Of a DNA stretch of 64,000 nucleotides, positions 29,795-62,953 are shown piece by piece. The notes under the pieces were generated by a model. That model was given only the letters and a program-made list of their open reading frames with translations. It had not been told where the DNA came from and searched no databases. Within the stretch, counting starts at the first letter, position 1, and every line of letters starts with the position of its first letter. The DNA is from Ophelia neglecta (taxonomy: Eukaryota). The translations under genes were made by a program, and so were the position numbers. The stretch spans positions 67,456,001 to 67,520,000 of the forward strand of contig OZ260663.1 in assembly GCA_965285935.1 (NCBI GenBank), written 5' to 3'.

Positions 29795-32700
29795 CTAGGC
29801 TAAGCGTATCTTCTTGGTCGCACTTTCCGTCTGATGGTTTATGGCACTGGTTCCATTCAACATGGTTTCAGGGCCTATGGCCTGAAGGAGAGAGGAGTTG
29901 GTTGATTCCCCAAATAGTGTAGCTAATAGGGCAACTCCATAACCTGTTGACCGTTCACCCTGAAAAACAATTACTTTAGGTCAAAATCCAAAATTAGAAC
30001 ACACTATTAATAAGGACAAAATCTTGGGAATAATGATTGATCAAAAACAAAATTGTTTTAGCAATTGGCAGGAGGTTGGTTACTTGTTAGTGTCGTACAA
30101 AAATAGTATACTGAAATGCAAAGAATTTATAGGCGGTAACATCCAGGGGTGGGGGGGGGGGGGGGTTGTCATTTTGAAATTTTGGAAAATAGATTGCTAC
30201 TCCAAGTGAACATTGGTTAAAATCTGTAAAGCTTACTGAATAAACTGGATAGGCCATATCTATGTGAATCCAAGTTCCTGGGTATTCAAATCCTATGTGA
30301 GCTCCTATGAATAATGCAGCACATGACACCTCTCCATTACTACGATCCTGATACAAGAAATACGATAAATTAATGAAACAAGTAACTGAGAAATGATTCT
30401 TGTCTGATTTCCCCCTATGCTCAGAGAAGCTTTTACCCTAATAACATTACCATACACCTGCAACACCCACCTTGAAATACCATTATTACAATAAAATAAC
30501 TTTTTTGGAAATAATAAACACTGACTGCACTGGAATTCTTCATATCAGCCATGGCGCTGGCAAACTCGCTGAAGTGTAGTTCAGGGCAGTAGAGCAGCGG
30601 ATGGATCAGGTCTCCTGATGTTCTGCCTGCAGCCACACAGGTGGGCTCCCACTCCTCTCGGTTGGTCACCATAGCACCATGATAACGTCCTGGTCAATGA
30701 ACATAGAACTTTAGAACATGAATTATTTATACAGGAAATTGAAAATTCCCTCCTCTCTCATCAAGTTGCAAATGTTCTACCACCAGTTACTTGACTTCTT
30801 AAAGAAATTCAAAGGGATATTACCAGGCTATAACAATACCAGACAGCATAAAGAGCAGAACAAAGAAATCATATGCAGTGAGCTTTCATCCTACAGCAGA
30901 ATAAGAATAGGACCTTGGATGTAGATTACACAATGAGAAAACAGTTAAAAGACCATGTACCTGTAGCCAATCCCTGAGCGCCAGTCAGAGTAGCCATGTC
31001 TACAATAACATCAGCTTTCAGATCTTTACTGGCATATGCTACCTGAAACATCATGAATAATTAGGCTTTCTATTCTTCAAAGCAAAAAAAAGCATCCAGA
31101 AATGCATGCTTTGGCCAGGGAAAATGGAAAGGTGATGTGTGCCTGAATGTTAATCAGGGGGTGGGGGAGGGGGGCAGGGATTATTAATTTTGTCCTCATT
31201 TTCAAATGACATTTAATTGTTTCCCATTCATCATAGATCAAAAGAAAAATCATTATGCCTCTTAAGAGCAACTATTACTGGTACTTTAAAATTGGCTTCT
31301 AAAAATGTCGTTTGTCAGTATGTAACTATTTGTTTACAGTCTCAAAGTTTGAGCAACTGAAGGTGAAGACTGAAGTTTTGGCAGAAGTGAAAGGAAGGGG
31401 GGGGGGCAGTAATTAGCAGAAGGGGGGGGGATTGGATTGATGGAGGGAGGAGTGGGAGTGAGGGATGCTTGAGTGAGATGATGGTGAGGAGGCACCCATG
31501 GGGGGGGGAGGTGGGGGGCAGAAGGGGAGGGAGGGGGTGAGAGGAAGGGAGATAGGCAGAAGTGTTTGGTTTTATATATAACCAATGTCACCACAGCTTT
31601 CCAGCTATTACAGTTATCAGTATTTGTAAAGGACAGTGCCCAATAGAAAGGGTCCCTCTTTGACTTTGATACAGATTGGGGAGGGTGGGGTTGGGGCAAT
31701 TTTACCCCAAGTAGTATAGACATATACATGTAACTGCAAAATATTGTCAATTACCACTCAAATAATCAAAGACTAAAATATCACAGATCTTACCCCATCT
31801 CCTAACACTAGTCTTCCTTCAGCATCAGTGTTATTAATTTCAACAGTTCTGAAATCAAATTTGGTATCAGAAACATGAACAAGTCAATCCTTTTAACTTA
31901 TCAATTGACTGATTGATAAGATTATGTCTTTTGGGTCTCCTATATATATATTAAAGGATAAATTGTTAATGCGAGTTTCAGTGCATAAAAAAACACTCAG
32001 GGATGGGGGGGCCTAAATACTACTGCTACTCAGGGGATTGTGTCAAAATTTCATACTAATTATTTTTGCCAATGGACTTAGAAATGTTGTTTGGACAGTT
32101 CAACTATTCAGGGCCCATCATTTAAATATCTTCTTTTTTATTGACTAGACACTACACATACAAAAACAGAGAGAAAATAAATTAAATTTGGTTACTCACC
32201 TTCCTGAATACAATGTTATTATGTCATCAGGTCTCAAGGAATTAGGACCAACAGCATTTTCAGCAAGACAAAATAAAGCATGAAGATTATCCCTAAAACC
32301 CTGAAAATGTGCAAATGAATGCCTATCTCTATAGAGTAATTTTAATGTGACATTAACACTTTTATTGAAAATCACATTGAACTCCATTTCATTAGTTTTA
32401 GGTGCATACGTTTTAATTGGGGCCAATTGCCTAGAATAATAGAATTCTTTACCTGTTTTACAGCAAGGTAAAAAGCTCCTAATACAGCCGCAGCCCCACC
32501 ACAATCTCGCTTCATTCCTGGCATGGTTGTCTGAAAAAATCATAGATCAGGATAGTACAGTGGTACATCTGCTTTACATAATTCATTTGTACCTTTGTTT
32601 TCCATGTTGCATTGCTTATAAACACAAATAAAACCTTTTCATTGTAACATGCACTTTTAGGCAACCAGTATGACGGGAATAATGGGGAATGGTATTATAA

Positions 32701-35443
32701 AACACAAAATGAAAACATGTATTTAAATGTTTATGTCCCCTTACACCTAAGTGTCTAATAATATATTAAACCTCAAATTTCTAAATACAGACATACAAAA
32801 ATGTACCAGGTATATCCTTGTAGTTGAAGCTAGTAGTTGTATATGGTTCATTATATACCGCACTAACCTTTCCTTTTATACTGAGGCCACCTGTATCATA
32901 AACAATTCCTTTGCCAACCCAAGCAATGTTTTTTGTAGCTCCCTCTGGAGTGTGACTTAGAACGACAAAGGCTGGAGGGTGGACAGCGGCTTTGCCCACT
33001 CCATAAATACCTAAATGTACAGCAAAAATAATATTTCACTACAAAAGCATTAGGTGTTAATAGGTTAAAATATGCATGTTGCATTTTGTTTAAAAAGTTT
33101 CAGGAGGCATGACAGGTACTCACCCCCAAATCCTCTTGCCTTGAGATCCGCCCCTTGAACTATATATGGAAAGATACTCAATTCTTTTCCCACTCTATGG
33201 ATTTCCTATTTCAACAGAAAAAAGTGACCGCATTTCAACCATTAATATGTAAAGTGCCTTAAGGTGCCTTTTTTTTTATAAAAACAAACACATTTCATCT
33301 ATTATTGAATTCAACTAATAAGCTCTGCCATAAACTATATAGTACGATATCTTTACACAGAGCTCTGTGGATACATTGGAGATAAAACTTAATATGAATA
33401 TTGAATCACAGCGATAAAGCAAATTGAATGGTTAAGCCCACCTTCACAAAGGCATCAGTGTGCATTTCCGCACACGGTGTGTCAGTTATCCTGGCCGCCA
33501 GCCTTATTGCGTAGGCAGCATCTATAAGACACTGAATATCTTCATCAGGCAAGACGTCACTGCCAGTTCCTACTAGTAGAAATTCTATTGTGACATTTCT
33601 TTTGGTTTGATTTGTGGCTTGCTTTCTTGTGAAAAGAGGGAAAGCCCGAGCAGCTGCACATGCTGAGGCAAAGACATCACTTCTTTCACAGACAATCTAA
33701 AATTCATAGAAAAATTGAAGTTAGATTGTTTGATGGACAACCATCAATGGAATTGATACAATTCTAAAGAAAACTGTCTGCACCAAAAACTAACCAAGCT
33801 ATTAGTCAATTCAGGTTAGTGATGTTGGACTATTACCACCCAAATGGCTGGCATTGGCCTTAATATCTACTACGAACTGGCAATGAAGGGCATGGTTTAT
33901 GTATAACTGCCATTGCTATTGACTAGCTTTAGATACATAGTGTCACCTATTAGTTTATCATAGTTTAGGGAGTTTCATAAATTCTAACTGATATTTAGAA
34001 TGTTTTATGCAATAAATACCAATGAAAAACCAGCTTTAGACTGGTTTGTTACTTTATAAAATAACAAAAAAAATCCAAAAGATTATCAACACAGATTTAC
34101 GCACCACAACATACTCCTCACCGCCACTCATATAACTACGAATGATTTTGGTCAGAAAGTGTGCTCTGGATGGGGTGTTGTGTCGGCTGCATTTTGTTGG
34201 AAGTACGGCAATAGTAGCCTGAGTCAGCCACAAAGAACAGGAGTCCGTAGGAGAGGGATGAAGACTGTTCACAGCAGCATTGTAAGTCTATAAACATAAT
34301 AGTAAATTTAACAGAAAACATATAATTTCTTATTTTTACAAAAGTCTGAATGTTTCTAATGAATTTTCCCCAAATTGTGTCGGCTGCATTTTGTTGGAAG
34401 TACGGCAATAGTAGCCTGAGTCAGCCACAAAGAACAGGAGTCCGTAGGAGAGGGATGAAGACTGTTCACAGCAGCATTGTAAGTCTATAAACATAATAGT
34501 AAATTTAACATAAAACATATAATTTCTTATTATTACAAAAGTCTGAATGTTTCTACTGAATTTTCCCCAAATTTGTTTATTTCGGTTATTACAATCTTAG
34601 ATAGGACAGTTTATACTGGAAAAACATGTATGTCCCCTAACAGAGAAGGTAGCAGAACGAATTAAATCTGCTCATAGGTGTGTTACATTTTTGGAAAAAG
34701 CTGGCAATCAAACCCTTTACCAAATATTTGTTGCCCTCCACATGACACCAGTGGACAAAATAAATAATAACCCCTCTTACGAACCCCCCCCCCCCTTTTC
34801 ATTTCATTCCCCTCCAAACTAAGGCATTTACAAACTTTGGTAAATGTTTACACTGTAGGCTTTAAAGGTAACAGTTCTAGTTTTGCCAGGGGTTGATGTA
34901 GCAATATGAGTTTTAAATGACATTATTTGATCTTTGAATGTCAATCTGCTCTTTCTTAATGATAATATTTTAGGAGACATAATATGATATCAATGCTTAA
35001 CATACAACCAGTGTTAACCAGAAATAGAGCAGGTGGCCTTAATCCGAATGCTCCCTCTTCCCGCACCATTATTTTCCTAAACCCAGCCCTCTCCCACCTT
35101 TGGCAGCATTAAATAATCCCCCCTTACAATATTTGTGTAAACCCCACATCCCCCCCTGGTAATAATTGTGACAATTCATTATTCCACAGTGTTTTTCTAA
35201 ATCAGCATCCTTCTATTTGAAATGTTCTCATACTTTCCCCGTCTGGTTTCATTAAATAATATCAGCTGCAGTCTGAAATGTAAGAAAACATACCTCCTCA
35301 GAAACTCTTGGTTCAAGTTTTTTCCTGATGGTTTCCCAAGTTACTTTGTTCAGATTTTTCAACTGTCCTATGATGAGCACTGGGTTTTTACTGGGGTCAG
35401 AGCTGGTGAGAGTGCCAGAATAATGAAGATTTACATTTGTCAT
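29795..35443 (-). CDS. NPEPL1: Probable aminopeptidase NPEPL1 (M17), 522 aa from the conserved Met
   Basis: Exons 35443-35294, 34287-34105, 33696-33442, 33205-33124, 33010-32868, 32530-32453, 32300-32200, 31848-31794, 31042-30961, 30689-30526, 30347-30237, 29959-29795 (1569 nt, in frame). Motifs VGKGIVYDTGG, MKRDCGG, NTDAEGRL, DMATLTGAQ, WIHIDMA. Probable first exon ends at 37644. Confidence 0.95.
34178..34571. repeat. 197-bp tandem duplication across an NPEPL1 intron/exon boundary
   Basis: 34178-34374 vs 34375-34571: only 3 substitutions seen, all in the intronic part. Confidence 0.95.
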
Positions 35444-36276
35444 TGCAATTGATGTGTTCAACCGGCCCTGAAATTAAAAATAAACAACTGCAATTTTTAA
35501 TAATGGTTTGGACCAATTAACCGGACAGCAACAGGGTGCTCTCAGTATTCAAACACCAGATTAAATGACCTAGGGTGCCTGTAATATGGTCGGTGTATTA
35601 TGTTTATCTGCTAAGCTAAGTTTCATAGCTCTGGGTCCATTTCTAATGTCATATTGGTTGGTTATATATTAACTTTGGACCACAGAGCTATGCAGCAAGA
35701 TCCCTGGTCCCTGTGGTAAAGCTGAACTTTTTCCACTTACCAATAAGGCACTATTTTTCTGGTGCAATAGAGTGGTTACGGGCTAACTTGAACAAATAAA
35801 CACTTGTTTCCTGATGGTCAATTCAGTGCACAAGAATCATGTTCCTATGAATAAAGAAGTTTAGCAGTGACTTTGAAATACTGTATGCCATGACATACAT
35901 CAGTGGTACAGACTTAGCGCAGCTGACCACGCCACTGTTCATATTCGTTTGTATACTGCCGTTATATTCATGTGGTTTCACAGTCATTTACATTGTTTAG
36001 AGAGCATATTGATCAGACCAACTATAGTAAAGGCAGCGACAACATTTCAAAGTGGGTCAAAAATATCACTATTTGTAGATGTATCTAAATGTTAAAACCG
36101 AATTGACTAAGCTAAATAATTGTTTATTTGTACGTGTATATATACACCTACCAACAAGATAACGCCAGAAAAATAGTGTTGTATTGATACTTGTAGAAAT
36201 AGGTTCACCACTGGGACTAGATGTCTCAACCTTAGCTAAGTTAAATAGAAGCCAACTAATATGACATTTTAATTGA

Positions 36277-37644: not shown

Positions 37645-37927
37645 TGTAAAAGCGTTTTTGTAGCCGGTGAACAACCTTGTTTATGTATGGATCGACGATC
37701 TCGCAGTCTATTCACGCTCAAGTCTCGCGATGATTTTCCTGTTCTGGATTTTATCATAACCATTATGACATTATTTCAAAATGTTCTCATATAATTAAAT
37801 TAATTCCTTTCTACACACAAGCTCATTTGATAACACCTTTATGATTTTGGTTAAAAGTACACTTTAATAAATAGTGTAACATCATGTAAACATTCAGGTC
37901 ACATGATCCGCTTGTCAAATCTGCAAG
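37645..37927. promoter_or_regulatory. Bidirectional promoter region NPEPL1/GAN
   Basis: Divergent first exons <300 bp apart; CpG-rich; TCTCGCGA palindrome (~37723) and GGTCACATGA E-box (~37897). Confidence 0.6.
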
Positions 37928-40900
37928 ATGGCTTCCACTAGTTGGGTCCAGAAAAACTTTACCGAGGAAAATCTAATGAAAATGTCACATCCTTTACATG
38001 CCAATAGCCTCCTTACTGCGCTGAATGAAACAAGAAAGAATCCTCGACTGTGTGACGGCACTCTTCTTATTGCGGATTCGGAGATTCCAGTGCAAAGAAA
38101 CGTTCTAGCTGCTGCCAGTCCTTACTTCAGGTATATCAGAACTGTCAAACAATGGCCATGAACAGACCTTGTTTTAAATTTATGGCTTACATCAAAATGT
38201 ATAATTCATGCTTTCAAGGAAATAGTTGTCTCAAATTTAAATAAGGCAAGAAATTGATAAAATCATAAATTGTTACTGTTGATGGTAACAAACTAAGAAC
38301 GTATTGTAAAATAAAAAATCGGCTAGATATAAATAGATTTAAAGGGGGAGGGGAAGGGGGGTGGGGGTGGGGGTTGGAAAAGGTAAGCTGTCGGGCACAT
38401 TTCCTGCATAATTCCCATCATCATATCCAAGCCTTCAAGGCAGCAGTAAATTTGCAGTATTTCCCTAGCTACTCAATTGGAAACAATTTACCTTAAATTA
38501 GAGCTAAATGTTCAGGAAAATCCTGGTATTTCACATATAGTACAGGGGTTGTGTTATTGGGGACAACAAATGACTAGTGCATAATCCTTTACTAGTCTGA
38601 CTGACTACAAGAACTCATGAATACACTGCCTTAGGGTTCATGCATCAAAGCCATGTTCTATCCCCTACCACATACCTCCCCCCTCCCCCCAACCCTCCCA
38701 GCATTGCAGGTTCTTGGCACTCACCAATTCTGCCTCCCCTAGCCTGCCCTGCACTAGATGATAAAAGTAGAGCTGCTGTATTGAGTTCAGGATTGTTGTA
38801 TTAATTTCAGGATGACTTACTACATCAACCCTCCTCCTCCTCCTCCCCCCCCCCCCCACCCCATGTCCACTTACCATACACCACTACTCCATGACACAGC
38901 TTAGCCTTAGTCTGCTCCTAATATTATTATTATCATTATTAGGTGTTTATTATCCCGAACTTAATCTGAGCGGCTTGAGAGCCAATACAAACATATATAC
39001 AGGGATTACAAAAGGATATAATCACATATAGGAATACATATACAATGACAACGTTTAAAAATGCATAGGTTTAAGTGAACATAACTTTTGCGAAAGGACC
39101 AAATGTTGTTACTATCAGTTTCAATATTGTTAGATGCTATCACACAGTTGCAAAGCTTGATTTTTCTATACAATAACAAAGAGAAGGCTTTGTTATTTTA
39201 ATTGTTGTAGATATCTAGGACTGAAAAATGACAATTTTTTTTGGTAGAAAGGTTCAGAAACAGTATTAAATCATTAGCTTAGAGAAGAAACAGGACATGC
39301 TGGGGCCACAGGAATAAAAAAGGGTCGCCAAGTTTCCTTGGGCAGGTAAAAATGACATAGGCCTATACAGCTTCCATCCCATTCAATGCACATATCAGGG
39401 TTGCTTAGATTTGTCCCTTACATTGCTCTTGGGCATCTGATGGTCAATATGAAAGGTTTGCATTGGGAGCATATGGATAAGAAGCTACAGCCCACTATAA
39501 TTCCATCAAATAGGGTAGAAAATGCCCCTGAAATGATGTATATATAATCAGTACTTGCTGAAAATGTGAGGGATTTTATCATGTTGCAGGAGAATGAGGG
39601 AAATAGGTAAATTGCAGGATTCCCAAGAAATATATCTATGTTTTATATCTATAAATACTTTGCTTAACTCATTTGATCACAATTGGTGTTTTGATTTATA
39701 TTGTTAATGTTGAGATGAACTTTACTGTTACTATATGTGTGCACACTAATCCTGTGACTGTTTTACTTTATTCCAGGGCTCTATACAGCTATGAATTGCC
39801 AGCAAATATGTCAGATTCCAGGAGAACACCCCTCAATATTGATAATTTGACCAGTGCAATATTTGAACAAATACTGGATTACATTTACACATCTGTGATA
39901 GTTCTAAGTGAAGAAAACATACAAGATATTCTTCAGGCAGCAGACATATTGCTCATGACAGATTTGAAGGAGCTGTGTTGTGAATACTTAGAGCAATGCA
40001 TTACTGTATCTAATTGCTTAGGAATCAAGGAATTCACTGAGAGATTTTCCTGTCCAAGAGTGTGTCACAAGGCCACAAACTTCATGGATGAAAACTTCCT
40101 GTATGTTGTATTCCATCTATTCTTGATTTTAAGTGCATGTCCCTGTAATTATGTCCCTGGTGGGTTCTATATACTTAGGGATATCATTTTTTGTGCTGCA
40201 ACTCTGGGATAGTTGATGGTGTTGGTTGTAATGCCTTAGGTTATTTTAAACATCACAAAAGCCAAACATCTTTACTTTGGTGTATAACATCTTGGGTGTA
40301 GATGAACATGGTAACATCCATATTTGGCACATTTATAAATGTTATCCAACAGAACAAAATGGGCACCAAACTTATGGCAAAAACATATGGCACCTAATTA
40401 GATCCTGAGACATCGGGGGTGGTATTGTGGGTATTTATATCCTGCTGAATATTAAAATATTCAAAGTATACTCTCTTGAAACTATGGACAAATATATATT
40501 TCAAAGTGTCAGCCTATTCAGCCATATTATGCTAAAGATACTAAGGTAATATGCATGAAGTGTGACAAGTTTCCTTACATTTCAGTGAAATTAGCTACAC
40601 GGAAGAATTTTTATCAATGCCAGCAGACAAGGTTAAGGATATCTTAAAAAGAAGTAGCCTTCTCATTCAGACTGAAGATGCAGTTTTTGACTGCATCATG
40701 CGATGGATCCATCATGATAGCAACACTAGGAGAGATCAACTACAGGTAAGTACAAACAGGATGTTCTTTTTATTTCTATGGTGGTATCTCCTGTAATGCA
40801 CAAAAAGTAATGACCTGTGAACTCTTGAGCTACTCATTAACCATGCTTCACAAGTCCCCTGCATTCACTGGGGACCCCACATGCCACAGCCATTTTTATT

Positions 40901-43261
40901 TTAAATAGTCTTGTTGTGCAGGCAAAACAAATAAAGACAATAAGCTCATGAAAAAAAAAATTTCCTAAATGGAAATCAAGTAAAATGACCCGAATATATT
41001 GTATTGTAAGACAGACAAACATATTTTGATGGTAGTTTTACCAGTTCAAATGTTCATGGTTTTATTCTGTTTTTTTTAAGGACATTCTTACCACTTGTGT
41101 CCACATGGGTTTGCTTGATGAGAGATATGTCCAAGAACATGTAATTGCAGATGAGCTTATAAGAAGTCTCCATCTGGAGAATTTTGTTCTGCGTATGAGA
41201 CAAGAAGATAGTATGAAAAAACAAAGAGGATATACAAACATGATTGTAGTAACAGGAGGAGAGGGGAGCTCTAAACGGTAATAACATTCTGTTCAACATG
41301 CATGTAATGTCTCCTAAATGCATTCTTCCCCAGCATGGTAGGCACTAGCTGCTTTGAACTAATGTAATATCTCTCTCTCTACTCATTTGTTTGACTGAAG
41401 ATCAATTTTGCACAAGTGCCTTGTAACTGATTTTAATTATTTTCCTGGGTGCTCTGGCTGCAGTGTATATCAATGTGTACACTACATGCTAGGGTATGAT
41501 GGTGTCACAGCTAGGGCTCAGTTTACAGAGTCCTTGAAAAAAAGCCTGAGGAAGTAATTAAAACCATATTTATGTCTGCATTTATTGTTATAGAATTCAC
41601 TAAATTGATAATAATGATGTTCTAATCTTGCAAATATCTTAATCTTTCAGTGACCCAGAGATTGTGGAGATCAAGAATTATGTCCGTTGCACTGCATATC
41701 ACGGCTATGAGGAAGGTAGAACGTGTGCCTGGATCAACCTTGCTCCAATGCTTTCTCCCAGAATAGGACATGGCATGGTAGAAGCTGGTATGCATTTTTA
41801 AGTTTTCTGACAATGGATTTTAAAGTTTAAAGGATTTGTTTTATTGTTCAAGGCTCCTACTTTTAATAATGCGAGACTCGTGGCATAACATGCCGAATCA
41901 CAGTACACTTTTTTCCAAGCATGCACTCTCAAAAATGGCAATTATGCACATATGTTATCAATGCCCCAGTCTTAAAGGATGTTTATATAGCTTTATCTAG
42001 GCTAAATCTTTGGCCCTGCACTAAATGCTGACTTGGTACATGACAATATGTGGCATGGATTGGATGAAGTTGACATTGGCTCTATGGCTGACAATATTTA
42101 CAAACAATTTTCAGAGAAGGAATTATCATAAGTGCTATACAGCAAATTTAAATTAGCTAGTCTATATATGTGTAGCATTTTTGGTTGGACTTTCCAAAGT
42201 ATTGTGGTGTTGGAAAAAATACCCCATGGAGGAGATGGGATCACCTCAATTTTCTTTAATGCAGTATTACAGTATTATAGTTTCTTATAGTATAACTTAT
42301 ATGACACCTTTTTATAAATCTAAAAGATGTGTATGTTTTTTTTTAATCTTTTATTATATTATGTTTTTCAGGTGGATATCTCTATGTAATTGGTGGCCGT
42401 GATGACAGTGGGCGCATTTTAAATACTGGAGAGCGATATGATCCTTGCAACAATGTATGGGCTGCTACTCCTCCTATGAACCATGCACGGGTAGGCTTTG
42501 GACTTGTGGCTGTCGATGACAAGATATACGCCCTGGGAGGCAGTAATGACATGTCTGACCCACTAACTAGTGTGGAGGAGTTCAATATTTATACAAACAA
42601 ATGGAGGCGTTTACCGGATATGAATCTGAAAAGGGCTTGGTCAGCCCATGCTGTGTGTAATAAAAAGATATATGTTATCGCTGGAGGCATCATGGGAAAG
42701 CTTTATGAAGCTGTCGAGTGCTTTGACCCTAAATCAGAAGCTTGGGTTTCTGTGGCACCAATGAAAGAAAGAAGATTTGATGCAAGGGCCATAGGAATGG
42801 GGGAAGATATATTTGTGTTTGGTGGCTTCAGGAGGTTTGAATGCCCTAGTGCTATGCAAAGTGGATCTGGAATGAAATTCTGTGGCACAGAAGTATATTC
42901 AACTGAGCAGAAACATTGGATGATGATGAATAGAGACATGGCCATGTGCACTATGACAGACAGTAGCCATATAGACGCAGTCACTAAATGTAAAGATGAA
43001 ATAATCTTAATTGGTGATTTGGATGTTGGAGGTATGAGGCACTGTGTGCGTGCATATCGACCTAGTACCAACAATTGGAGAGGAGTGGTCCAGAATCACC
43101 CCACCGAACAGCGAGCAATGCAGTCGTGTATTCTTAAGATTCCTAGTTCTCTGGTGTATGATCTCACTTGGCAACAAGACAAGCTAACATGGAGTAGTGT
43201 AAGGCAAACTTACGGTCCCCAGCATATGTGCAATGCAGGCCAACATAGTCAGTTTATGTAG
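37928..43261 (+). CDS. GAN: Gigaxonin (BTB-BACK-Kelch Cul3 adaptor), 636 aa
   Basis: Exons 37928-38130, 39777-40100, 40586-40745, 41081-41277, 41651-41787, 42372-43261 (1911 nt). Gigaxonin-like segments EIPVQRNVLAAASPY, IQDILQAADILLMTDLKELCCEYLE, RGYTNMIVVTGGE, WINLAPMLSPRIGHG, GERYDP; Kelch GG repeats. AATAAA at ~43508. Confidence 0.88.
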
Positions 43262-52813: not shown

Positions 52814-55800
52814 TTAAGGCAATAAAACATCTTTGGTATTCTTTTTTACAATCAAATATGCATGTTTTAATACTGGACGATGGTGGGGAAAGTTCTGGCA
52901 GTGAACACGATTTTCTTTCAGCAAATCGGCTTCTTTCTGTAGAAGTTCCTGTAAACACAAAAAAAAGCTCTCAAAATTTTATTGACAATGAGTATAACTG
53001 TAAATATTTTATTCTCTAGCCACATTTGTTCTATATAGCAATTTGGATACTGTCTCAGCTCAATCCTTGTGACATCTGGATTTGATATGGATTTGGAGCT
53101 GTAACTGATAATACTACATCTTAAGAGGTGACATTGGAACTAGGGATATGACTTCTATTAGCTCTCTGCTACTCTTCGTGGGAGAGAAATGCCATCCAGA
53201 TTACTGCTGCAAAAAGGCATTTCTTACTGTAGATCTATACACATTCCATTCTTTCTTTGTTTGAAAGGATAAATGATTGAGCTAATGTTAGTAAAAATCG
53301 GTTAATTTTGGCTGTCCATTAATTCAATATGACCCATATAGAGGTTCATTGAACAAATCTGAAAATGGCACTACTAAACTTGGCATGTTTAAGTTATGTG
53401 TTCCCGTTACCATGGCAACACTGACCAAATCCAATCAAGTAATATTAAGCGCCTATTTAAGGTTCAGCCTATGGCATTTTAAATTGTGTTCATTTCTAAA
53501 TGCTGTAGTGCAGGGGGGGACTCAACGGTTTTCTGGAAATGGAAAATATTGTTTGTGTGTTTAACATGTTAATGGACACCTGGGAACGTTGGTAACAAGT
53601 GAGTTCAAGAAGTTCAGGTCAATAGCTGTTGAACACTTATCCAATAACCTTTGTCCCCATTTCCCCAACCTTTGTTGACATTTTCAACACAATAAAATGA
53701 CTGCCCTTGGCTGCCATTTTGTTTTCCGATCAGGCTCAAAACCTTTTCAGCTCCTTGCAAGTGTCATTTGAAGTCTCACATGAAGTTATGAATTTATTCC
53801 CACAACAGTTTAAAACACTGAAGTTAAATAATCAATTTTCCCCCTCAGTGCTAAAACATAATTAATTCTTTGTTAATAAGACAAATATGCCCTACTGTAA
53901 CATGCACAAACAAGGCATTTAGAAAGCAAGCCCCCCACCAATTAAAAGGGATAGTAGATCTCCTAGTCACAAAATCACTCCTGGCAAAGTCCAAGTATGA
54001 GTGGGACTCAAACCAACCCCCCACCACCCCCCCTCACAATATATTATTTGATCAAAACACTGGGTTCGAATGAAATAATGATAAAAGCAAAAAAAAAAAA
54101 ATGACATAATTTTGCCAATTGCATTTCTTATTGCTATGGGAACTTATTATATTAAGGTTTCCGCTAAAAATTAATTAGTTCATGTTAAGCTCATAATGCT
54201 TCCTCAATTTCAGCCATGTACATGTACCTCTAAAAATTTGCGCAATCTTGTAAACAAGCTTTGGTCACAATAGTGTTTCGGAGAAAGTAGTACAGGCACT
54301 AAGGAACATGTGGAATACAGTAACTGTGTGCCTAACAGTTGCGGAGTTATAACCAAAACAAATGGTGGCATTGCAAAACATATCCCCCTACTTTTTTTTT
54401 CAAAAAACGGTTTTAAGGAAAGTTTTTAAATACCTCTATCCTCAGTAAATAGTCACAAATAAGAGATGAATATGAATCCTGAGAAGAGGCACACTGGGCT
54501 GCTGGTTGTTGTGGCTGATGAGATAGTAAAGAGTTCTTTGGCGTGGGCAATGACAGTTTGTCTCCACTTGACCGAGGGGAAGTGGATTCATGCCCTGATT
54601 GCCTTTCCTTCGTATGATGCTCATTTGAAGATTCGTTTGTGCTTTTTTCTCCTGTGGCACAACTACTTGTTGTTAAAGAGTCTTTACAAATGAAATTGCC
54701 TTTACCTACGGTTCCTCTCATCATTCGCAAAGGAGGTTTTTTCACAAAAAACCTGTGAGGTTTCAGAGTGTGTTTCTTTGCAACACAGTGAGTCTCATTG
54801 TTCAAGTCCATCATTTCTCCCATTTGATCACAACCATATTCTTTTGCTGAATGTTCATTTTGATCATGAAGAGTATTTTGATCAGTAACGCGTGGATTGT
54901 TTGTCATTATATCCCCATTTTTACTATTGTCTGTTCCCTTTCCCTTGTTCCCAGTTAGAGATTCAGTAGAAGGAACAGGAACATCTATACTGGTAAGTTC
55001 AATCACATCTTGATCAACTTCTTGTACAGCTGGTGCTGCACCTGCTAAACTTTTTTGACTTTTGTCACAAACATGCACTGAGCCTGCTGTAGAGCTCCCA
55101 ATTTTATGACTTGATTCCAAAACGTTGGCAGAATCTGCTGGCGATACAATTTCCTCAATATGTTCACCTTCTTCAACACAAGACACTAAAGCAGATGTTT
55201 CCAGAGCAGTATCTGTATATAGTTTATGTTTCCCTTTCCTCGTAGGTTTGTTTATTGCTGGCTTCTTGTACATTACTTTAGGGTCATATCTGGTTTTCTT
55301 TTTTGGACCTGTACTTTCATTCAAAGAAGTCCTTTTACTAGCCCTTACAGCTTGTTTAGTTGGTGATACTGGGCACTGTAAAGTTTTTCTTGTTCTTAAA
55401 CACATTCTTGTTTTTTCCTCATTAGCCTCAGTATCCACAGTTTCTTCTTTGCCCTTCCTAGACTTTCTTCTTTTGACCGGTGTACTTTCAATATCTGACA
55501 CTGGAAGAATAAGGCCATCTTCTTGTATAATATTCTGTGTGGTCACTGCATCTGCTGATGTTTTAGACACATTATGACTTTTCTCGGAACATTGTTTGCT
55601 TCCTGCTTCTAACAGATCAACACCAGTCCGGGTCAAACTGATTTCTTTTCTAGCAACACTTTTTTTCATTTCAGGAACAGTATTGCAGGCAGGGGGGCAC
55701 ATGGGCTGTGTGGTGGCCTGTTTTCCTGTAACACAGTTCCAGTTATCCATTAGTGAGAAGCTAACATCTTTAGCCATGTTGTCTGTAGTGTTAGTAGATG

Positions 55801-58800
55801 GTTTAAGTGTACACTTTTCACCAGTATCTCCATCATAAGCCACACTTACAGAGGAGGGCAGTACATTGCCACTGTCCATTGTAGATATGTGACTTAGTCT
55901 TCTCAGTCTTTCAGTCTCATTTCTTTCTGATACATTAATTGCATCAGATAAATCATGTGATAATGACACTCTCAGTTCCTCTAGCCTCTGCTTCTCTTTT
56001 GCCTCTTGGACAGCAATATTAGACGCCTTCAGCAAGGGTCTTGCGATACATTCTGCTGTGGTATTTTGTTTTTGCTTAATCTGAGATTCATGCTCATCAG
56101 CAACCACAGATTTGTTGTGGCTATCAAATTGTATGTTACCTCCCTTCTCCAACATTTCTGATACAGTTTTATCTTCATTAGGAGACTCTGTTTCCAGTAT
56201 GGGTTTCAGTGGAGACATTGGAAAGTCGGGTACAGAGATTTGGGAGTTGGTGATATGATCTAGCTGTGTGGACTGTCTATGCTCGCATGAGCTGTCAACT
56301 GGTGTGTCTGTTTCACTGCATCTTGGCTGCTGGAAGATAGGATTACTGATTACTAACTCCGACTGAATGCCTGCACTCGTCACCCCAAGCTGAAAAAGAC
56401 AAGAAAAAATTCACTTTTAACTAACATTTACATATTTATTGGAAGGTTCTTCAGGAGAATAAAAAACAAGGTTTAAGAGTCATTTCCTTCAATGAATTAT
56501 GGAAGTGCACGGACACACTTTTTCATAAAAATGCAAGCCTAATTTTAATATACTGGTAAATCAACTTGATTAAATAAATCTACCTTTTAATGTAATGAAA
56601 AAATGAATATTGAGTAAATTTATTTGTAACACAACTTATTTTCCTTGTCTTTACCTCTTGGTCATTGGAGTCAGAGGAGTCAATTCTCTGGCCATCTTCA
56701 TCATCAGCATTCTCTCTAGGAGCCATTCTAGGAACCCTGATCAGTTTATCAGTATTTTGTAGACAAGGTGAATGTACATGAGGTGTTTCCAACTGATGCT
56801 GGGTGCTTTCCCTCTCTGTGTCATTCACAGCATCAGGCTGTGTTTCAGAGCCCATAGCCAGCGAATCACCAACCTGGCAGGAGACACTGAGACATTGGCG
56901 CTTGCCAGCCTGGACTTGGCTCTCCAAACATAGCATGTCTAAAGAATCCCCAACTTGGACATCTACATTGTGTGTTTTCACATTTTCATCATCAGAATTT
57001 TTTGGTAATTCAATGGGTGACTGCTCTGATTGTGGAACCGTCTTAGATGATTTACTTCCATAATTTAAAGAAGACTTTCCTTTGTTACTCTCAGTGGCAC
57101 AATCTTCCTCCTGAGTAATTATGTTTTGATATACATCTGCCACATTTGCATTTGGTGGTTTTTGTCTTTTCTCTTGATGATTTGTTGTATTCCATTCTGC
57201 AATTAATATATTGAATGTAACTTTATTCTTATGAAAATAATAAACTATTCATTTATAAATCAGAGAAAGCCTACATTTGCCATGGAATCTGGGAGGAGCA
57301 CAGCAGTTCAGCAAAGAGGAAATGCTTAAAGGTCAATATTTTCAGCAATGATCGCATGATGCATATGCAAAGCCCATCATTGAAACTGGTGTGAAGCAGC
57401 TTTACTATTAAACGATATTCAATAAAAGCCTTAACATTTGCGAGTCCATTATTTTGCGAATTTCGCAAGCATGGTGAAAACCGCAAAATTAAAAGGCTCA
57501 TGAAAATTTAAGGGCCTGCAAAAAAACTCTTGTTTGAAACTTTAAAATGGAGAATTAAAGGCCGGCAAAATAAGTTGTGTATTACAACTGCAAACATTAA
57601 GAGCCAATATAAGAGTTTGACTTTAAGAGTGGCAGCATCCTTGGATTAACAAAGTAAGACTGAAAAAGATCTCTTTGTGTCTGCCTATAGAGAAAAACAT
57701 ATGTCCAAATGACTATTCACAGACCTGGTATTGCATTAGTAAGTTCTTTTTCAAGGGTCGATGTAATGAAACTTGACAGGATCAGTTTTGTAGAGGGAAT
57801 GTGCGTGCCTGCTTCCCATGAGAGTGTTCTTATGCCATCTTCTGTATGAACATTGGATCTGTCTGTAAATACATAAAGCACACACTATTTTAATTTGTGA
57901 GCCAGTTGTTAGTAATACTGGAATGCTGGTAATGTTTGCACATTATTCATCGTGCAGTTTCTTTGGGTTTCTTCAGTTCCCTTGGGTGCTGTTTTGTGTT
58001 GAACAAGTGTATATCTAATGGTACATCATAACATGCGGGCAAACCTCTAAGGGATAGTCTATATTTCTGCCCATTGGGTAGAAAGAATTAATTAACTTAT
58101 ATTATATATGATATTGAAAATGGCGCTAAATTAGCAGACAATGCCACTGATAAAGCTACAAAAATTTGTTCTAAATGGCGGGGATGAGTGTTACTGGCGA
58201 GAGCCCCCCTCCCCCCATATTCCATTACTTGTTAACAAGTGTAATTTTAAAATGAATGGACAGAAATTCCAACACCAAATTCCATGAAATGTCCAAACAT
58301 TTTTGTCTGAACCCACCACCCCACTTACTACTTACACCCTGAAATACAATTCACTTTTTTAAATTTTTTCTTCAGAACTGCCCTTGATTAATATGATAAA
58401 GTTCAAATTTGACAAACACCATTAGAACCACATTGCATAACTTGGTTAGCAGAAAATCTTAGTTTTTTATTGCATTGCTAGAATAACCAAAAAGATGCAT
58501 AATGATTACCGCATTATAGCTAATTCACGTTTAAGGCAGCCATGCTTCAGCCTTGACATATGCAGCCTTCAAGCTATAATGCTTTAGGCAGAAACTTGTA
58601 ACACCAAGGGCTCTAGGATACTGATTTGGCCCTGGCTGGTGTGCCAACACAACTTCCCGGGTTTCAACTGTTAAACTTTTTTTAGTGTTTTGCAGAATAC
58701 CTCAGAAATGGGGAAATGGAACAGGGGCCACTCCATTTCACCAAATGTGTTTCTTCAAAAAAAAAAGGGGGGGGGGTGCAAAAATCTATTCCACAAACCT

Positions 58801-61800
58801 TGTATTGAATCCTGATGCTCATTTTCAAGTTCTGGGGTAATAAAATTGGAAAGGGCCAATCTAGTGGAAGGAATAGAAAGGATGGGCTTCCAGCCACATG
58901 TCCTTAAGCCTTCATCAACTTCGGATTCTGCAGGAGAACTCGGTCTTCCTGCAAGTACATCTGCAAATGTCAATAGTAAAATAACTATAAATATTCTTTT
59001 AATTAAAAAAAAAAACTTGAGTGTGAAAATTTCATACTTAGGATTTGTATTCTCATCAACAAACCTTTTTGAAGATTGCTAGTACTAGCTCTCTTATCAT
59101 AGTTGTTTTTGTCCTTTTTTTGAGACATTTTGCGGCCTTGAAATGTCTGACTTTCTTTTAGCTGTAAATCCTCTGGTGTATTGGGATGATCTGATGTCAG
59201 CTCAATGGATTGCTCTAAATCCTTTAGCTGGGACAAATTGTAGCTTTGTGATGACTGATCCCCTGAAAGTGCTAACTTCTCTAATATTGATAAATTGTGG
59301 CTTTCAGATGTCTGTTCAATTGTATTGTGGCTTTCTCCTGTTTCAAGGTGATCAGAATCTACAGCGTCATAGGTGTCCTGATTCTGAATAGATGCAATCT
59401 CACCGATTCTGTCTCTGAAAGCAGAAGCAATGCGAACCTTAAATGATGGCTATCAGATTCAGATTCAGATTCAGATGTATTTATTGGACCATAGCAAAAT
59501 GAAAATGTCAAATGATTAATGGTAAGTTGAAATTATAATTATGGTCATGGAGACCCTCACTAAGATGAATATGAATCAATTTTGAGGTAATCACTAGCAT
59601 GGGAGCCACCTTAATATAACACTGAATGTATATATGGGTACTGGAAATAACAAAATACATACAAAATATTTGTTTAATAATGAGTTGTGGATAATAATTT
59701 AAATAAATTCGCATGCACACATCACACCAACCTATTAAATCAAAATTTATAATAATATACCACACAAGTAGACATAAGATTATCTGTGTTACAAGTCATC
59801 CTCCCCTTCGCCGGAGGAAGGATAAGCCGGAGACACAAGGCAAAAGAAACAAAATATATATATATAAAACACATCAAACAAGAAATGCAAATAATTGCTA
59901 GATGCATGGTTGCAGAAGTGATTAATGTACCACAGTAACATTAGCAATCCACATCAGAAGTGATAAATACAGTACAATACAATATAGTAACATTGGTAAT
60001 CCGTAGCCCATATCTCTCCGATCACCCTCAGCCTAAGGTTTAGAATGACCGGAGAAACACAAACCACAGCCCACTTTGCCAGATTTCTGACAAAGAATAC
60101 ACCAGAGGAAGGACAAGCCAGAGATACAAGGCAATAGGAAAAAAAATATACATATAACACATCAAACAAGAAATGCAAATAATTGCTAGACGCACGGATG
60201 CAGAAGTGATTAATGTACCACAATAACATTAGCAATCCACATCAGAAGTTATAAATACAATGTAATATAATATAGTAACATTGGTAATCCGTAGCCCATA
60301 TCACTCTGATCACCCCCAGCCTAAGGTTGAGAATGACTGGAGAAACACAAACCACAGACCACTTCGCACATTTTTGCACAAATTTTTATGAAAGATAATA
60401 ATTTTGCAGCAAGATTTAAAATTATTTGATCTCCGCTGTAAATAATGTTTTACAATCATAATGAAATTCAGGGAAAGTAATCCTTTTTATAAAACATTTC
60501 TAACTAAACTGCAAGCAATTCGTGAACCAGTATAAAAGATAGTTACGGTTTTATCAGTTTCAAATTAGCAGCAGATAATTCTTGTACCTTGGGATGGTCC
60601 ATTCTGTAAAATAAAACAATTGAAGCCATTACCAGTATAAACATACATTATTTGAATATTCATGGCTTAAGCTGAAAAGGTTTGAAACAATCACTACCTC
60701 TACTAAATAAGAGGACATAATGTCCAAGGGAATATGAAATTATTATTGATAAAATATAAACTGTATAAATATGTGCCTTCTAACAAAATGTTCACATGTC
60801 ATTTGTGTAAATGTTGGCCATGAATCCTAAATAAGTCTATCAATCCACACAGCATTGAAACTTACAGGCCTAAACAATATATGTTATGCATGCTAAACAG
60901 CTTCTGTGGGTCAAGGGTTTTCAAAATTATAGTCATTTAAAAGGAGCTAGCATACATGTAGATGCAGGCCCAAGCCCAAATATATATCTCTCCCCATGAT
61001 TTATTTTCTTCCAATACTGTGGGGGCAAACAATATCACTTGCTAAGTATAGAGAATTATTTTTGCATGCAATTTGACTTTTATGTAAGGTGGAACAGGAG
61101 CTTCTGGCCTATCATTTATGAAATAATCTAAACTACATGTATACTCACATAAATTCAATATCATTTTTGTGGTGAAATCCATGCTCAAGAAAAACAAGTT
61201 CAAATTCCTCAATGATTAGTTGAAACTCACACCAATGCTGCATTGAAAAAACATTTAGTAATTTTATTGGACTGAACATTAGATATTGCATAAACTTATA
61301 TAACTGGTAATACTACATCAATGCAAACCCCAAATTTTTGTCTAAAAAAGTGATCAATTATACCAAACATTCTTGATAATATAATGAAACAAAGTCTTAC
61401 AATCAGTTCAATGTTTATAGCATGGAATGAAGGATACTACCATATCATTACACCAGTATATATATTATTGTAATCTTACCAAATCTGGAAAATGCACAAA
61501 GTGTGAAAAGTATTTGTTTAAAAGCAATCTGGAACGGTTCCAATCAGGAAGACTGCACTCTGCAAACCTATAAAAATGATCAATTTGGATTTGAATGAAA
61601 ACACAAAATAGAAGTTCAATATACTGTAATTCCTCTTATATTTAACAACTAATATAATTATAATTCCAGCACTATGAATAATTAGAGACAAACCAAAATT
61701 ATTACTACTTGGATTGGTACTATTTTTTCAAAGTCTCCATGAGAGGTTACCATGTTGAAGTACTTGTAATGGGAGGATTTAATTTTTTTTAAATTATGAG

Positions 61801-62953
61801 AAACTGGAGTGTATCAATTACTTAAGTGTGTATGTATAAGTAGAGGAATTATGATATACATGTTTTGGGATATGTGCCTTATGTGGCTGTTTCTGTTCAT
61901 GGGAAGGAGTATCCCCTGGTCAGATAAGCAGGTGAATTGACTGAGCAGAAGGGTGGATCCTCTGGTCAAATAAACAGGTTCATTGGATTGGTAGAAGGGT
62001 GGATCCTCAGATAAACAAATTTTGATGAATGTAAGGATATTAACAAATCTGGATGAATGCGACATCAGATTTTTTTATTGGTATCTATTAGACTAGTACA
62101 GTGAAACCTGTCTAATCAAAAAAACGGACCATATTATGGTTAATATGCAGGTCATTTAAAAGACGTAAAGAGGATTTGGCTCTCATTTAGTGGCCTTAGT
62201 GGGCAAGTGACCTTATTACACAGGTGACCACAAGAATAGATGTCACTGTGGTACTTTTATCACTGCTCTGGTGAAGGCTGACCAGACTGACTTAAAAATA
62301 GGTGTTGGGGTACTATCTTTTGCATTCTCCCTTTAATTGGAACTACTTTCATTAGTGTGCATGATTCCTGAGGTTATCATATTTTAGTTTAAAATATGTA
62401 TGATGGTATGTGTTTGCACCGATCAACCTTATTAACTTTCTGTATCTATAATTACATATTTGTGAATTTTAGCAGAGCATTTGGAGTGAACACCCCTCGA
62501 ATCCATGTCTTTCCATCTGTCACTTGCTTTATAACATTCCCATCCTTGACATCCATATGCTGCAATGAAATTAAAATTGTTGAAATGTTGATTTTTCATT
62601 TCATCTATGAGTTGGACTATATTTAGACACGGAATCTAAACTTATTTATAGCTAGTATTCACAGGAAAAAAAACTAACATCTTGGGCACTTGGGGACAAA
62701 AAATATTGTAGGGTAGAGTTCAAAAGAGCAGGCCTATAAAAATTAAAGCATAAACATAAATTATCCCACTAACCTTTAGCACATTAACAGCTCGGGGCAG
62801 ACTCTTCAAACTTTGGGGATTCTCCTGACAATGTTGCTGTTTTCCTTTCTCTTTTCCACCATCACTTTTATCATTACTGATATGTTGAAAAGTGACAAGG
62901 TAGTCAACCAACCAATGTTTTGGGCCAAAAACATTACATGTCTTCTTTGACAT
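52814..62953 (-). CDS. ACD: Putative TPP1/ACD-like shelterin protein: N-terminal OB fold plus very long low-complexity region, ~1266 aa
   Basis: Exons 62953-62774, 62559-62456, 61567-61480, 61237-61149, 60603-60547, 59414-59065, 58960-58799, 57862-57725, 57196-56655, 56389-54434, 52948-52814 join in frame (3801 nt). The N-terminal series KHWLVDYL / VTDGKTWIRGVFTPNAL / RLLLNKY / EFQLIIEEFEL / DHPKVQEL follows the order of TPP1 OB motifs (RPWIRELIL / VSDGTHSVRCLVTREAL / RLLLLQD / EFYLQVDRFSL / DVQKKL, recalled). The gene structure is more certain than the symbol. Confidence 0.7.
59455..60380 (-). repeat. Retroelement 3' remnant with (TCTGAA)n tail and a ~290-bp internal tandem duplication
   Basis: Reverse complement aataaatacatctgaatctgaatctgaatctga at 59455-59486; 59811-60100 is repeated at 60101-60380. 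Confidence 0.75.
62099..62248. mobile_element. Tc1/mariner(pogo)-type MITE
   Basis: TA|cagtgaaacctg ... atgtcactg; same terminal type as 4069-4225. Confidence 0.6.

What the first reader, a model, noticed from the sequence alone, without database searches (positions are those of the whole stretch)
57725..58960. Exon-duplicated motif resembling a doubled POT1-binding motif
Seen: two consecutive phase-1/phase-1 exons encode parallel peptides DEGLRTCGWKPILSIPSTRLALSNFITPELENEHQDSIQ and EDGIRTLSWEAGTHIPSTKLILSSFITSTLEKELTNAIP, consistent with an old exon duplication with retained residues (G-RT--W-----IPST-L-LS-FIT--LE-E). Recalled: the human TPP1 POT1-binding region after the OB fold contains W...YTVPSSMLCIS. 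Inference: this protein may bind two POT1 molecules or two POT1 paralogues, an unusual shelterin architecture. Symmetric phases would let either exon be skipped.
Basis: partly seen in the sequence, partly recalled or inferred. Interest (0 to 1): 0.75.

Follow-up and report, generated by a model that had tools for sequence, protein, structure and literature searches.

The report
Duplicated motif exon in probable TPP1
Two neighbouring exons of what is probably this invertebrate's telomere protein TPP1 are an old, still-conserved duplicate of one short peptide motif, but whether that motif binds POT1, and whether both copies sit in one protein, could not be tested.

Summary
On the minus strand, exon A (58960-58799) and exon B (57862-57725) encode parallel peptides: 18 of 39 residues identical, BLOSUM62 score 89 against 20.9 +/- 4.2 for shuffles, reached by 0 of 5000. 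Both exons have AG/GT sites, phase 1 at each end and lengths divisible by three. The motif occurs only twice in the 762-Mb genome. Synonymous sites are near saturation while dN is 0.45, so the duplication is old and both copies are constrained.

The exons chain in frame with five small upstream exons and about 830 residues of disordered sequence downstream. Only one upstream exon hits Pfam TPP1, weakly (E 0.013, 15.7 bits, below the cut-off). I rate TPP1 identity at about 0.75. An earlier scan note (s1-732039) reached the same gene identity.

The POT1-binding reading rests only on position and a pattern resemblance to the human motif. No search gave a significant match, no orthologue was found, no RNA run exists and no complex could be modelled. 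POT1 is single-copy, so the idea of two POT1 paralogues is not supported. Alternative use of the two exons is a serious rival. Interest is moderate.

The parts
58799..58960 (-). Exon A, repeat copy 1 (162 nt, phase 1/1). An alternative in-frame acceptor would start it at 58948. The motif core is 58800-58916.
   Evidence: Profile match E 6.5e-33 in the own-genome search.
57725..57862 (-). Exon B, repeat copy 2 (138 nt, phase 1/1). The motif core is 57726-57842.
   Evidence: Profile match E 5.8e-26.
59065..59414 (-). Exon U: about 116 acidic, Ser-rich residues between the OB-fold exons and repeat copy 1 (phase 2 in, 1 out). A 104-nt intron separates it from exon A.
   Evidence: No Pfam family.
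60547..62953 (-). Five small exons: E1 62953-62774 (starts at an ATG), E2 62559-62456, E3 61567-61480, E4 61237-61149 and E5 60603-60547. This is the probable TPP1 OB fold, about 173 residues.
Evidence: The phases chain with canonical splice sites. E2 hits Pfam PF10341 TPP1 at E 0.013/0.02 and 15.7/15.1 bits, profile positions 49-82 of 158, below the 26.5-bit cut-off. E1 and E2 are single-copy in the genome.
56655..57196 (-). Exon C: 180 residues, disordered and acidic (net charge -15), the first part of the linker. It contains a small internal repeat, QVGDSL, at residues 80 and 107.
   Evidence: No Pfam family.
54434..56389 (-). Exon D: 652 residues of polar, low-hydrophobicity linker. Its donor at 54434 is only a candidate; read-through would reach a stop at 54413-54415.
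   Evidence: No homologue among 8000 scored candidates. No credible Pfam family.

Best explanation
The two exons are an ancient tandem duplication of one short exon inside a single-copy gene that is most likely this invertebrate's TPP1/ACD.

Each copy encodes one roughly 39-residue short linear motif. It has an acidic lead-in, G-x-R-T, an invariant Trp, an extended I-P-S-T-[RK]-L-x-L-S stretch and an acidic amphipathic helix, F-I-T-x-x-L-E-x-E. The motif sits between the OB fold and a disordered linker of more than 830 residues. Both copies have been kept by purifying selection.

By inference only, from position and pattern, the unit corresponds to the part of the TPP1 recruitment domain that contacts POT1's third OB fold. 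In human TPP1 that part is the Trp-pocket module plus the groove-binding segment. It does not correspond to the H1 helix, which binds the vertebrate-only HJRL insert.

Because POT1 is a single gene, the two copies would do one of two things. If both are in the protein, they give two docking sites. If only one is included at a time, they give alternative isoforms. My confidence is about 0.95 that this is a real, selected exon duplication, about 0.75 that the gene is TPP1, and about 0.4 that the motif is a POT1-docking element. The overall figure reflects the combined statement.
For: Shown:
- The duplication is statistically real and unique to this gene.
- Splice sites and phases are clean and all ten exons chain in frame, giving 1,222 codons with no stop.
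- pS is 0.645 (dS about 1.5) against dN 0.449, 10 of 18 identical residues use different codons, and the flanking introns keep no similarity. The duplication is therefore old and both copies are constrained.
- Exon E2 hits only the Pfam TPP1 family, at profile positions 49-82, which fits its place as the second of five exons of a roughly 173-residue domain.
- The layout of OB fold, then motif, then long disordered linker fits the TPP1 layout in Myler et al. 2021, section 10.
- The AlphaFold model of exon A is coil followed by a broken helix at residues 36-39 and 42-51. This is compatible with a motif that folds on binding and with the 'split helix' that paper mentions, but mean pLDDT is only 58.8.
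- A single POT1 locus carries C-terminal exons with two CxxC motifs, so an OB3-like partner domain appears to exist.

Inferred: I29/L34/S37 of the repeat repeat the spacing of Val308/Leu313/Ser316, and an invariant Trp lies upstream, as Trp293 does in human TPP1 (Chen et al. 2017, section 9).
Against: - The TPP1 hit is below Pfam's cut-off (15.7 against 26.5 bits). A clearly spurious hit of similar strength (DUF7438, E 0.022) came from another frame of the same DNA. E1, E3, E4 and the ORF holding E5 gave no Pfam hit.
- PDB searches with the repeat profile, E1, E2 and E4 found no TPP1 chain.
- The whole-genome Pfam TPP1 scan was silent, but so were all its controls, so it is uninformative.
- About 130 residues separate the OB fold from copy 1, whereas the paper calls the recruitment domain 'adjacent' to the OB fold.
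- The Trp-to-groove spacing is 6 residues, not 15. The position matching Tyr306 is Leu in copy A and Thr in copy B. No H1-like helix was identified.
- No orthologue was found, so conservation is unknown.
- There is no transcript evidence that E1-E5 and U-D are one gene, or that both repeat exons are included.
Confidence: 0.4

Rival explanations
1. The two exons are used alternatively, either mutually exclusive or as independent cassettes. Each protein molecule would then carry one version of the motif. The duplication would give two isoforms with different partner affinity or regulation, not a doubled site.
For: Adjacent, homologous exons with the same phase and similar length are the classic signature of alternatively used tandem duplicates (general knowledge, recalled). 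Every skipping scenario keeps the frame and places an acidic residue at the junction. Both exons have donors with a pyrimidine at position +3 (GTTTGT and GTCTGT), a weak form.
Against: Including both exons also keeps the frame, so nothing enforces exclusivity. The intron between them is 936 nt, which rules out steric exclusion. Both exons use ordinary GT-AG sites. Only short 12-16 nt inverted repeats are present, with no evident docking/selector pairing. Exon U, which has no duplicate, has the same weak donor form. No RNA data are available to decide either way.
Confidence: 0.3
2. The motif is a real, duplicated short linear motif, but it binds something other than POT1. Candidates are another shelterin or telomerase-associated factor, or a partner unrelated to telomeres if the gene is not TPP1.
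For: There is no significant sequence similarity to any solved TPP1-POT1 interface. The motif lies about 130 residues from the OB fold, and its spacing differs from the human motif. The gene identity rests on one sub-threshold hit.
Against: The motif is the only constrained island detected between the OB-fold exons and the long linker, which is where Myler et al. place the POT1-recruitment domain. The Trp and the hydrophobic/Leu/Ser spacing resemble the OB3-directed modules of the human motif.
Confidence: 0.25
3. The similarity is chance or lies in non-coding sequence, and the exons are not real.
For: There is no transcript evidence and no homologue in any protein collection.
Against: The similarity is 16 standard deviations above shuffles. 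Third codon positions are the least conserved (18 of 39, against 24 and 27 of 39 at positions 1 and 2). Both frames are open with canonical splice sites, and the exons fit in phase into a ten-exon chain of 1,222 codons.
Confidence: 0.03

Closest known systems
POT1-binding motif / recruitment domain of vertebrate TPP1 (human residues 266-320; POT1C-TPP1 complex of Chen et al. 2017, PMC5394241; PDB 5UN7 as cited by Myler et al. 2021)
   Same: It lies after the OB fold and before the disordered linker. It has an invariant Trp followed by an extended segment with hydrophobic, Leu and Ser residues at the spacing of Val308/Leu313/Ser316, and a helix-breaking region afterwards.
   Different: It is present twice, on separate exons. 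No H1 helix equivalent was found, and in human TPP1 that is the essential module, which binds the HJRL insert that invertebrate POT1 lacks. The Trp is 6 residues, not 15, before the groove segment, and the Tyr306 position is not conserved. It is about 130 residues from the OB fold. Sequence similarity is not statistically detectable.
Invertebrate TPP1 orthologues described by Myler et al. 2021 (PMC8653790, section 10 read)
   Same: An OB fold, a recruitment domain that is poorly conserved but predicted helical, and a variable disordered linker. That paper also predicts a split helix in invertebrate recruitment domains.
   Different: The text I read mentions no duplication of the recruitment domain. 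The linker here (at least 832 residues in exons C and D) exceeds the 50-700 range given. The figures and supplements of that paper could not be seen, so a doubled motif in one of their aligned species cannot be excluded.
Tandem exon duplications used as mutually exclusive or cassette exons (general phenomenon; recalled, no paper read here)
   Same: Adjacent homologous exons of the same phase and similar length.
   Different: No known exclusion mechanism is visible: the intron is long, the sites are ordinary GT-AG, there is no selector pairing, and double inclusion stays in frame. Actual usage is unknown.
Rodent POT1a/POT1b (Myler et al. 2021, passage read)
   Same: A lineage in which the POT1-TPP1 pairing became one-to-two.
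   Different: There the POT1 gene was duplicated. Here POT1 is single-copy, and it is a motif in the probable TPP1 that is doubled.

Membership tests
TPP1/ACD (Pfam PF10341, shelterin subunit) | An N-terminal OB fold that matches the family model above its cut-off. | tested here: inconclusive
   Exons were scanned one at a time and never joined. E2 scores 15.7 and 15.1 bits (E 0.013 and 0.02) at profile positions 49-82 of 158, against a cut-off of 26.5 bits. E1, E3, E4 and the ORF holding E5 gave no hit. The whole-genome scan with the family was silent, but so were its controls.
TPP1/ACD (Pfam PF10341, shelterin subunit) | A POT1-recruitment domain following the OB fold. | tested here: inconclusive
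   The repeat is a candidate by position and pattern only. No PDB TPP1 chain was found at E <= 10. The comparison with the residues named in Chen et al. 2017 is partial.
TPP1/ACD (Pfam PF10341, shelterin subunit) | A long, poorly conserved, disordered linker after the recruitment domain. | tested here: met
   Exons C and D total 832 residues, are 67-71% polar or disorder-promoting, and have no Pfam family and no homologue. This fits Myler et al..
TPP1/ACD (Pfam PF10341, shelterin subunit) | A C-terminal TIN2-binding motif. | not tested
   The 3' end of the gene is unresolved. Exon D may end at the 54434 donor or read through to a stop at 54413-54415, and one candidate terminal exon starts at 52948. 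No reference motif for invertebrates was available.
POT1-binding motif of TPP1 | Physical binding to the C-terminal OB3 of POT1. | not testable with these tools
   No multimer prediction is offered. The single-chain model of exon A has mean pLDDT 58.8.
POT1-binding motif of TPP1 | Conservation across orthologues. | not testable with these tools
   No orthologue was found: 1 spurious hit in 1.84 billion representatives, 0 of 8000 candidates for exon D, no word-sharing candidate for the profile, and 0 of 144 metagenome pattern matches confirmed. In the control search, the nearest relative of the neighbouring kelch exon is only 73% identical.
Mutually exclusive tandem exons | Adjacent exons with sequence similarity, the same phase and similar length. 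| tested here: met
Mutually exclusive tandem exons | Transcripts that contain one exon or the other but not both. | not testable with these tools
   No RNA run holds the locus. The 3 holders carry 0.87-0.92 of the sampled words across introns and exons alike, so they are DNA-like.

The most novel reading that the evidence does not exclude
Both exons are included, so this invertebrate's TPP1 carries two functional OB3-docking modules. One TPP1 would then either hold two POT1 molecules, or clamp one four-OB-fold POT1 at two OB grooves. This could replace the H1-HJRL contact that is essential in vertebrates and absent from invertebrate POT1. It would be a shelterin stoichiometry or geometry that none of the papers I searched describes.
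Probability: 0.15. Interest if true: 0.65.

Novelty: new variant of a known kind. Interest (0 to 1): 0.4.

Why it matters
How TPP1 holds POT1 in animals whose POT1 lacks the vertebrate HJRL insert is open. Myler et al. 2021 note only that invertebrate recruitment domains are poorly conserved. A motif kept in two copies over a long time marks the residues under constraint (W, IPST, L-LS-FIT, LE-E) without needing orthologues, and it gives two natural peptide variants for binding tests. If both copies bind POT1 in one protein, the one-to-one POT1-TPP1 pairing assumed from mammals would not be general. If the exons are alternative, it would be a case of isoform-level tuning of a shelterin interface. 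If neither holds, this is an ordinary exon duplication in a disordered region.

Tried and rejected
**Orthologue searches: all empty**
- Profile of A+B against 1.84 billion representatives: 1 hit, a tandem-repeat artefact protein with 20 short stretches.
- Exon D against the 5.8-billion-protein set: 0 of 8000 scored candidates.
- A+B profile, word search: no candidate.
- Metagenome contigs: 144 pattern matches, 0 confirmed.
- ESM Atlas with exon A and with E1: best scores 0.77, within the range shuffled sequences reach.

**Control**
- The kelch exon of a neighbouring gene finds 40 proteins. The best is only 73% identical and there is no self-hit. The collections therefore lack this species and its close kin, and the empty results say little about conservation.

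**Solved structures**
- The A+B profile gave two chance matches, E 0.44 and 1.2.
- E2 gave 28 matches, all fucose-lectin repeats and taken as chance.
- E1 and E4 gave nothing.

**Other checks**
- The Pfam TPP1 scan of the whole genome was silent, controls included, so it is uninformative.
- Inverted repeats gave 15 short pairs and nothing persuasive.
- A third, degenerate motif copy in exon U, C or D is rejected.
- Assembly artefact is rejected, because the copies are only 59% identical in DNA.
- Transposon origin is rejected, because the motif occurs only twice in the genome.
- RNA evidence: none is available. I did not use read laying, because the three holders are DNA-like and contigs cannot show splicing. 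This choice was not made to avoid a check.
- Supplementary files of the papers were not opened. The alignment figures and supplements of Myler et al. could bear on whether a doubled motif was already seen.
- Papers: Myler 2021, passages and section 10 read. Chen 2017, passages and section 9 read. All other papers were seen only as search listings.
- The claim that a doubled motif is not in print rests on (0 papers; listing only).
Full report
**What is there**

The window is animal DNA with long introns, about 36% G+C. The feature lies on the minus strand.

Reading the flanks gives two exons:
- Exon A is 58960-58799 (162 nt). A second AG 12 nt downstream would give an in-frame start at 58948.
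- Exon B is 57862-57725 (138 nt).

Both have a pyrimidine-rich tract and AG at the acceptor and GT at the donor. Both are phase 1 at each end and a multiple of three in length.

**Is it more than chance?**

The cores align without a gap, with 18 of 39 residues and 69 of 117 nucleotides identical. The BLOSUM62 local score is 89 against 20.9 +/- 4.2 for shuffles (maximum 52), and 0 of 5000 shuffles reached it. Among all 45 pairs of the ten exons I modelled, A-B is the only similar pair (z 16.2).

A profile of the two exons finds them at E 6.5e-33 and 5.8e-26 in the 762-Mb genome. The next matches are at E 1.9 and 2.1. The motif is therefore specific to this gene and not a dispersed repeat.

**Age and selection**

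By Nei-Gojobori counting over the 39 codons, pS is 0.645 (dS about 1.5, near saturation) and dN is 0.449. Identity is 24, 27 and 18 of 39 at codon positions 1, 2 and 3. Of the 18 identical residues, 10 use different codons. The introns beside the two exons keep no similarity above shuffles. The duplication is old, and both copies have been held by purifying selection on the pattern G-RT--W-----IPST-L-LS-FIT--LE-E.

**The gene**

Ten exons chain with canonical splice sites and compatible phases from an ATG at 62953 to a donor at 54434. They give 1,222 codons with no stop:

| Exon | Coordinates |
|---|---|
| E1 | 62953-62774 |
| E2 | 62559-62456 |
| E3 | 61567-61480 |
| E4 | 61237-61149 |
| E5 | 60603-60547 |
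| U | 59414-59065 |
| A | 58960-58799 |
| B | 57862-57725 |
| C | 57196-56655 |
| D | 56389-54434 |

The introns U-A, A-B and B-C are 104, 936 and 528 nt.

- Exons U, C and D are polar and acidic (67-72% disorder-promoting residues). They match no credible Pfam family and no homologue.
- Of the upstream exons, only E2 hits a Pfam family, and that family is TPP1/ACD: E 0.013 and 15.7 bits with ORF flanks, E 0.02 and 15.1 bits for the exact exon. The match covers profile positions 49-82 of 158 and is below the 26.5-bit cut-off. Those positions fit E2's place as the second exon of a domain of about 173 residues.
- Against this, a hit of similar strength to an unrelated family (DUF7438, E 0.022) came from another frame of the same DNA. 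E1, E3 and E4 gave nothing.
- PDB searches with E1, E2 and E4 found no TPP1 chain.
- E1 and E2 are single-copy in the genome.

I reproduced its exon span but treat it as a lead, not as support. The layout fits Myler et al. 2021, section 10: OB fold, a recruitment domain that binds POT1, a disordered linker of 50-700 residues, then a TIN2-binding motif. I put TPP1 identity at about 0.75.

**Is the repeat the POT1-binding motif?**

Chen et al. 2017, section 9, describe three modules in human TPP1:
- Helix H1 (Leu271, Ala275, Leu279, Leu281) binds the HJRL insert of POT1 and is the essential contact.
- Helix H2 starts with the conserved Trp293, which sits in a pocket of OB3.
- The segment Val305-Ser316 runs in the OB3 groove, with Tyr306, Val308 and Leu313 contributing most.

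Myler et al. state that invertebrate POT1 lacks HJRL, and that invertebrate recruitment domains are less conserved but are predicted to keep the second helix and a split third helix.

In the repeat unit, I29, L34 and S37 have the same +5 and +8 spacing as Val308, Leu313 and Ser316, and an invariant Trp lies upstream. The AlphaFold model of exon A is coil followed by a broken helix at 36-39 and 42-51, but at a mean pLDDT of only 58.8. This is a resemblance and not a test, and several points weigh against it:
- The profile found no TPP1 chain in the PDB at E <= 10.
- The Trp is 6 residues, not 15, before the groove-like segment.
- The Tyr306 position is Leu in one copy and Thr in the other.
- No H1-like helix was identified.
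- About 130 residues separate the OB fold from copy 1.

If the unit is homologous to anything in the human motif, it is the OB3-directed half.

**The partner**

The Pfam POT1 and POT1PC families each hit one locus only, on contig C1 near 115.315-115.318 Mb. This animal's own POT1 exon finds only itself. These scans give lower bounds, but there is no sign of a second POT1.

The locus has further open exons downstream with two CxxC motifs. Myler et al. describe four Zn-coordinating cysteines in OB3. Two POT1 molecules, or two grooves of one POT1, remain possible but untested.

**Both copies in one protein, or one at a time?**

Including both also keeps the frame. The intron between them is 936 nt, the splice sites are ordinary GT-AG, and the only inverted repeats are 12-16 nt. 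No known mechanism would enforce exclusivity. The donors of A and B are weak (a pyrimidine at +3), but so is that of exon U.

No RNA run holds the locus. The three holders carry 0.87-0.92 of the sampled words across introns and exons alike, so they are DNA-like and from one study. I did not lay them, since contigs of genomic DNA cannot show splicing.

**Conservation**

Conservation could not be tested. The profile search of 1.84 billion representatives gave one spurious hit. Exon D, the word-based profile search, the metagenome scan and the two atlas look-ups all gave nothing. As a control, a conserved kelch exon of a neighbouring gene finds 40 proteins, but the best is only 73% identical and there is no self-hit. 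The collections therefore hold neither this species nor close kin, and a 39-residue motif at that distance would fall below threshold. The empty results are not evidence of lineage restriction.

**Literature**

No paper in the library holds TPP1, POT1 and 'exon duplication' together. The listing for 'two POT1' and 'POT1-binding' shows nothing on a doubled motif in TPP1 (listing only). I could not see the figures and supplements of Myler et al.

**Verdict**

In detail: a real, old tandem exon duplication with both copies under selection, in a single-copy gene that is probably TPP1. The POT1-binding reading is plausible by position and pattern but unproven. The two-paralogue version is not supported. 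Alternative exon use is a serious rival. The case is a new variant of a known kind, of moderate interest, and it could be settled with cDNA reads and a peptide-POT1 binding or co-folding test.

Noticed in passing
window 59811-60382 (intron between E5 and exon U): A direct repeat of about 290 bp in two adjacent copies: 244 nt at 89% identity (59851-60094 and 60139-60382), plus a 44-nt piece at 84%. Tandem Repeats Finder reported nothing here. A third, weaker block seemed visible in the ORF translations around 59790-59950.
   Followed up: partly
window 56655-57196, exon C, residues 80 and 107: A small internal repeat, QVGDSL, occurs twice 27 residues apart inside the disordered linker exon.
   Followed up: no
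window 58948 and 58960: Exon A has two in-frame AG acceptors 12 nt apart. The alternative would remove four residues (V-L-A and the junction residue) upstream of the motif.
   Followed up: no
window 747-1217 (-), about 9200-18100 (+), about 30000-35500 (-), 37907-43258 (+): Neighbouring genes, judged by eye from open frames only: an ankyrin-repeat exon, a cytosolic carboxypeptidase (AGBL5-like), an NPEPL1-like leucyl aminopeptidase, and a BTB/kelch gene. The last exon of the kelch gene finds kelch-repeat proteins at up to 73% identity. These could serve as synteny anchors.
   Followed up: partly
G000:C1:115315230-115321300 (L009, L010): The single POT1 locus. It has OB1/OB2 exons, a long acidic open exon at the start of L010, and then exons with two CxxC motifs. 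Whether the stretch between the CxxC motifs holds an insert in place of the vertebrate HJRL domain was not examined.
   Followed up: partly
window 52817-52948 (-): A candidate terminal exon of 44 residues, with a good acceptor and phase 0 after exon D's candidate donor. Alternatively, exon D reads through to a stop at 54413-54415. The 3' end of the gene is unresolved.
   Followed up: no
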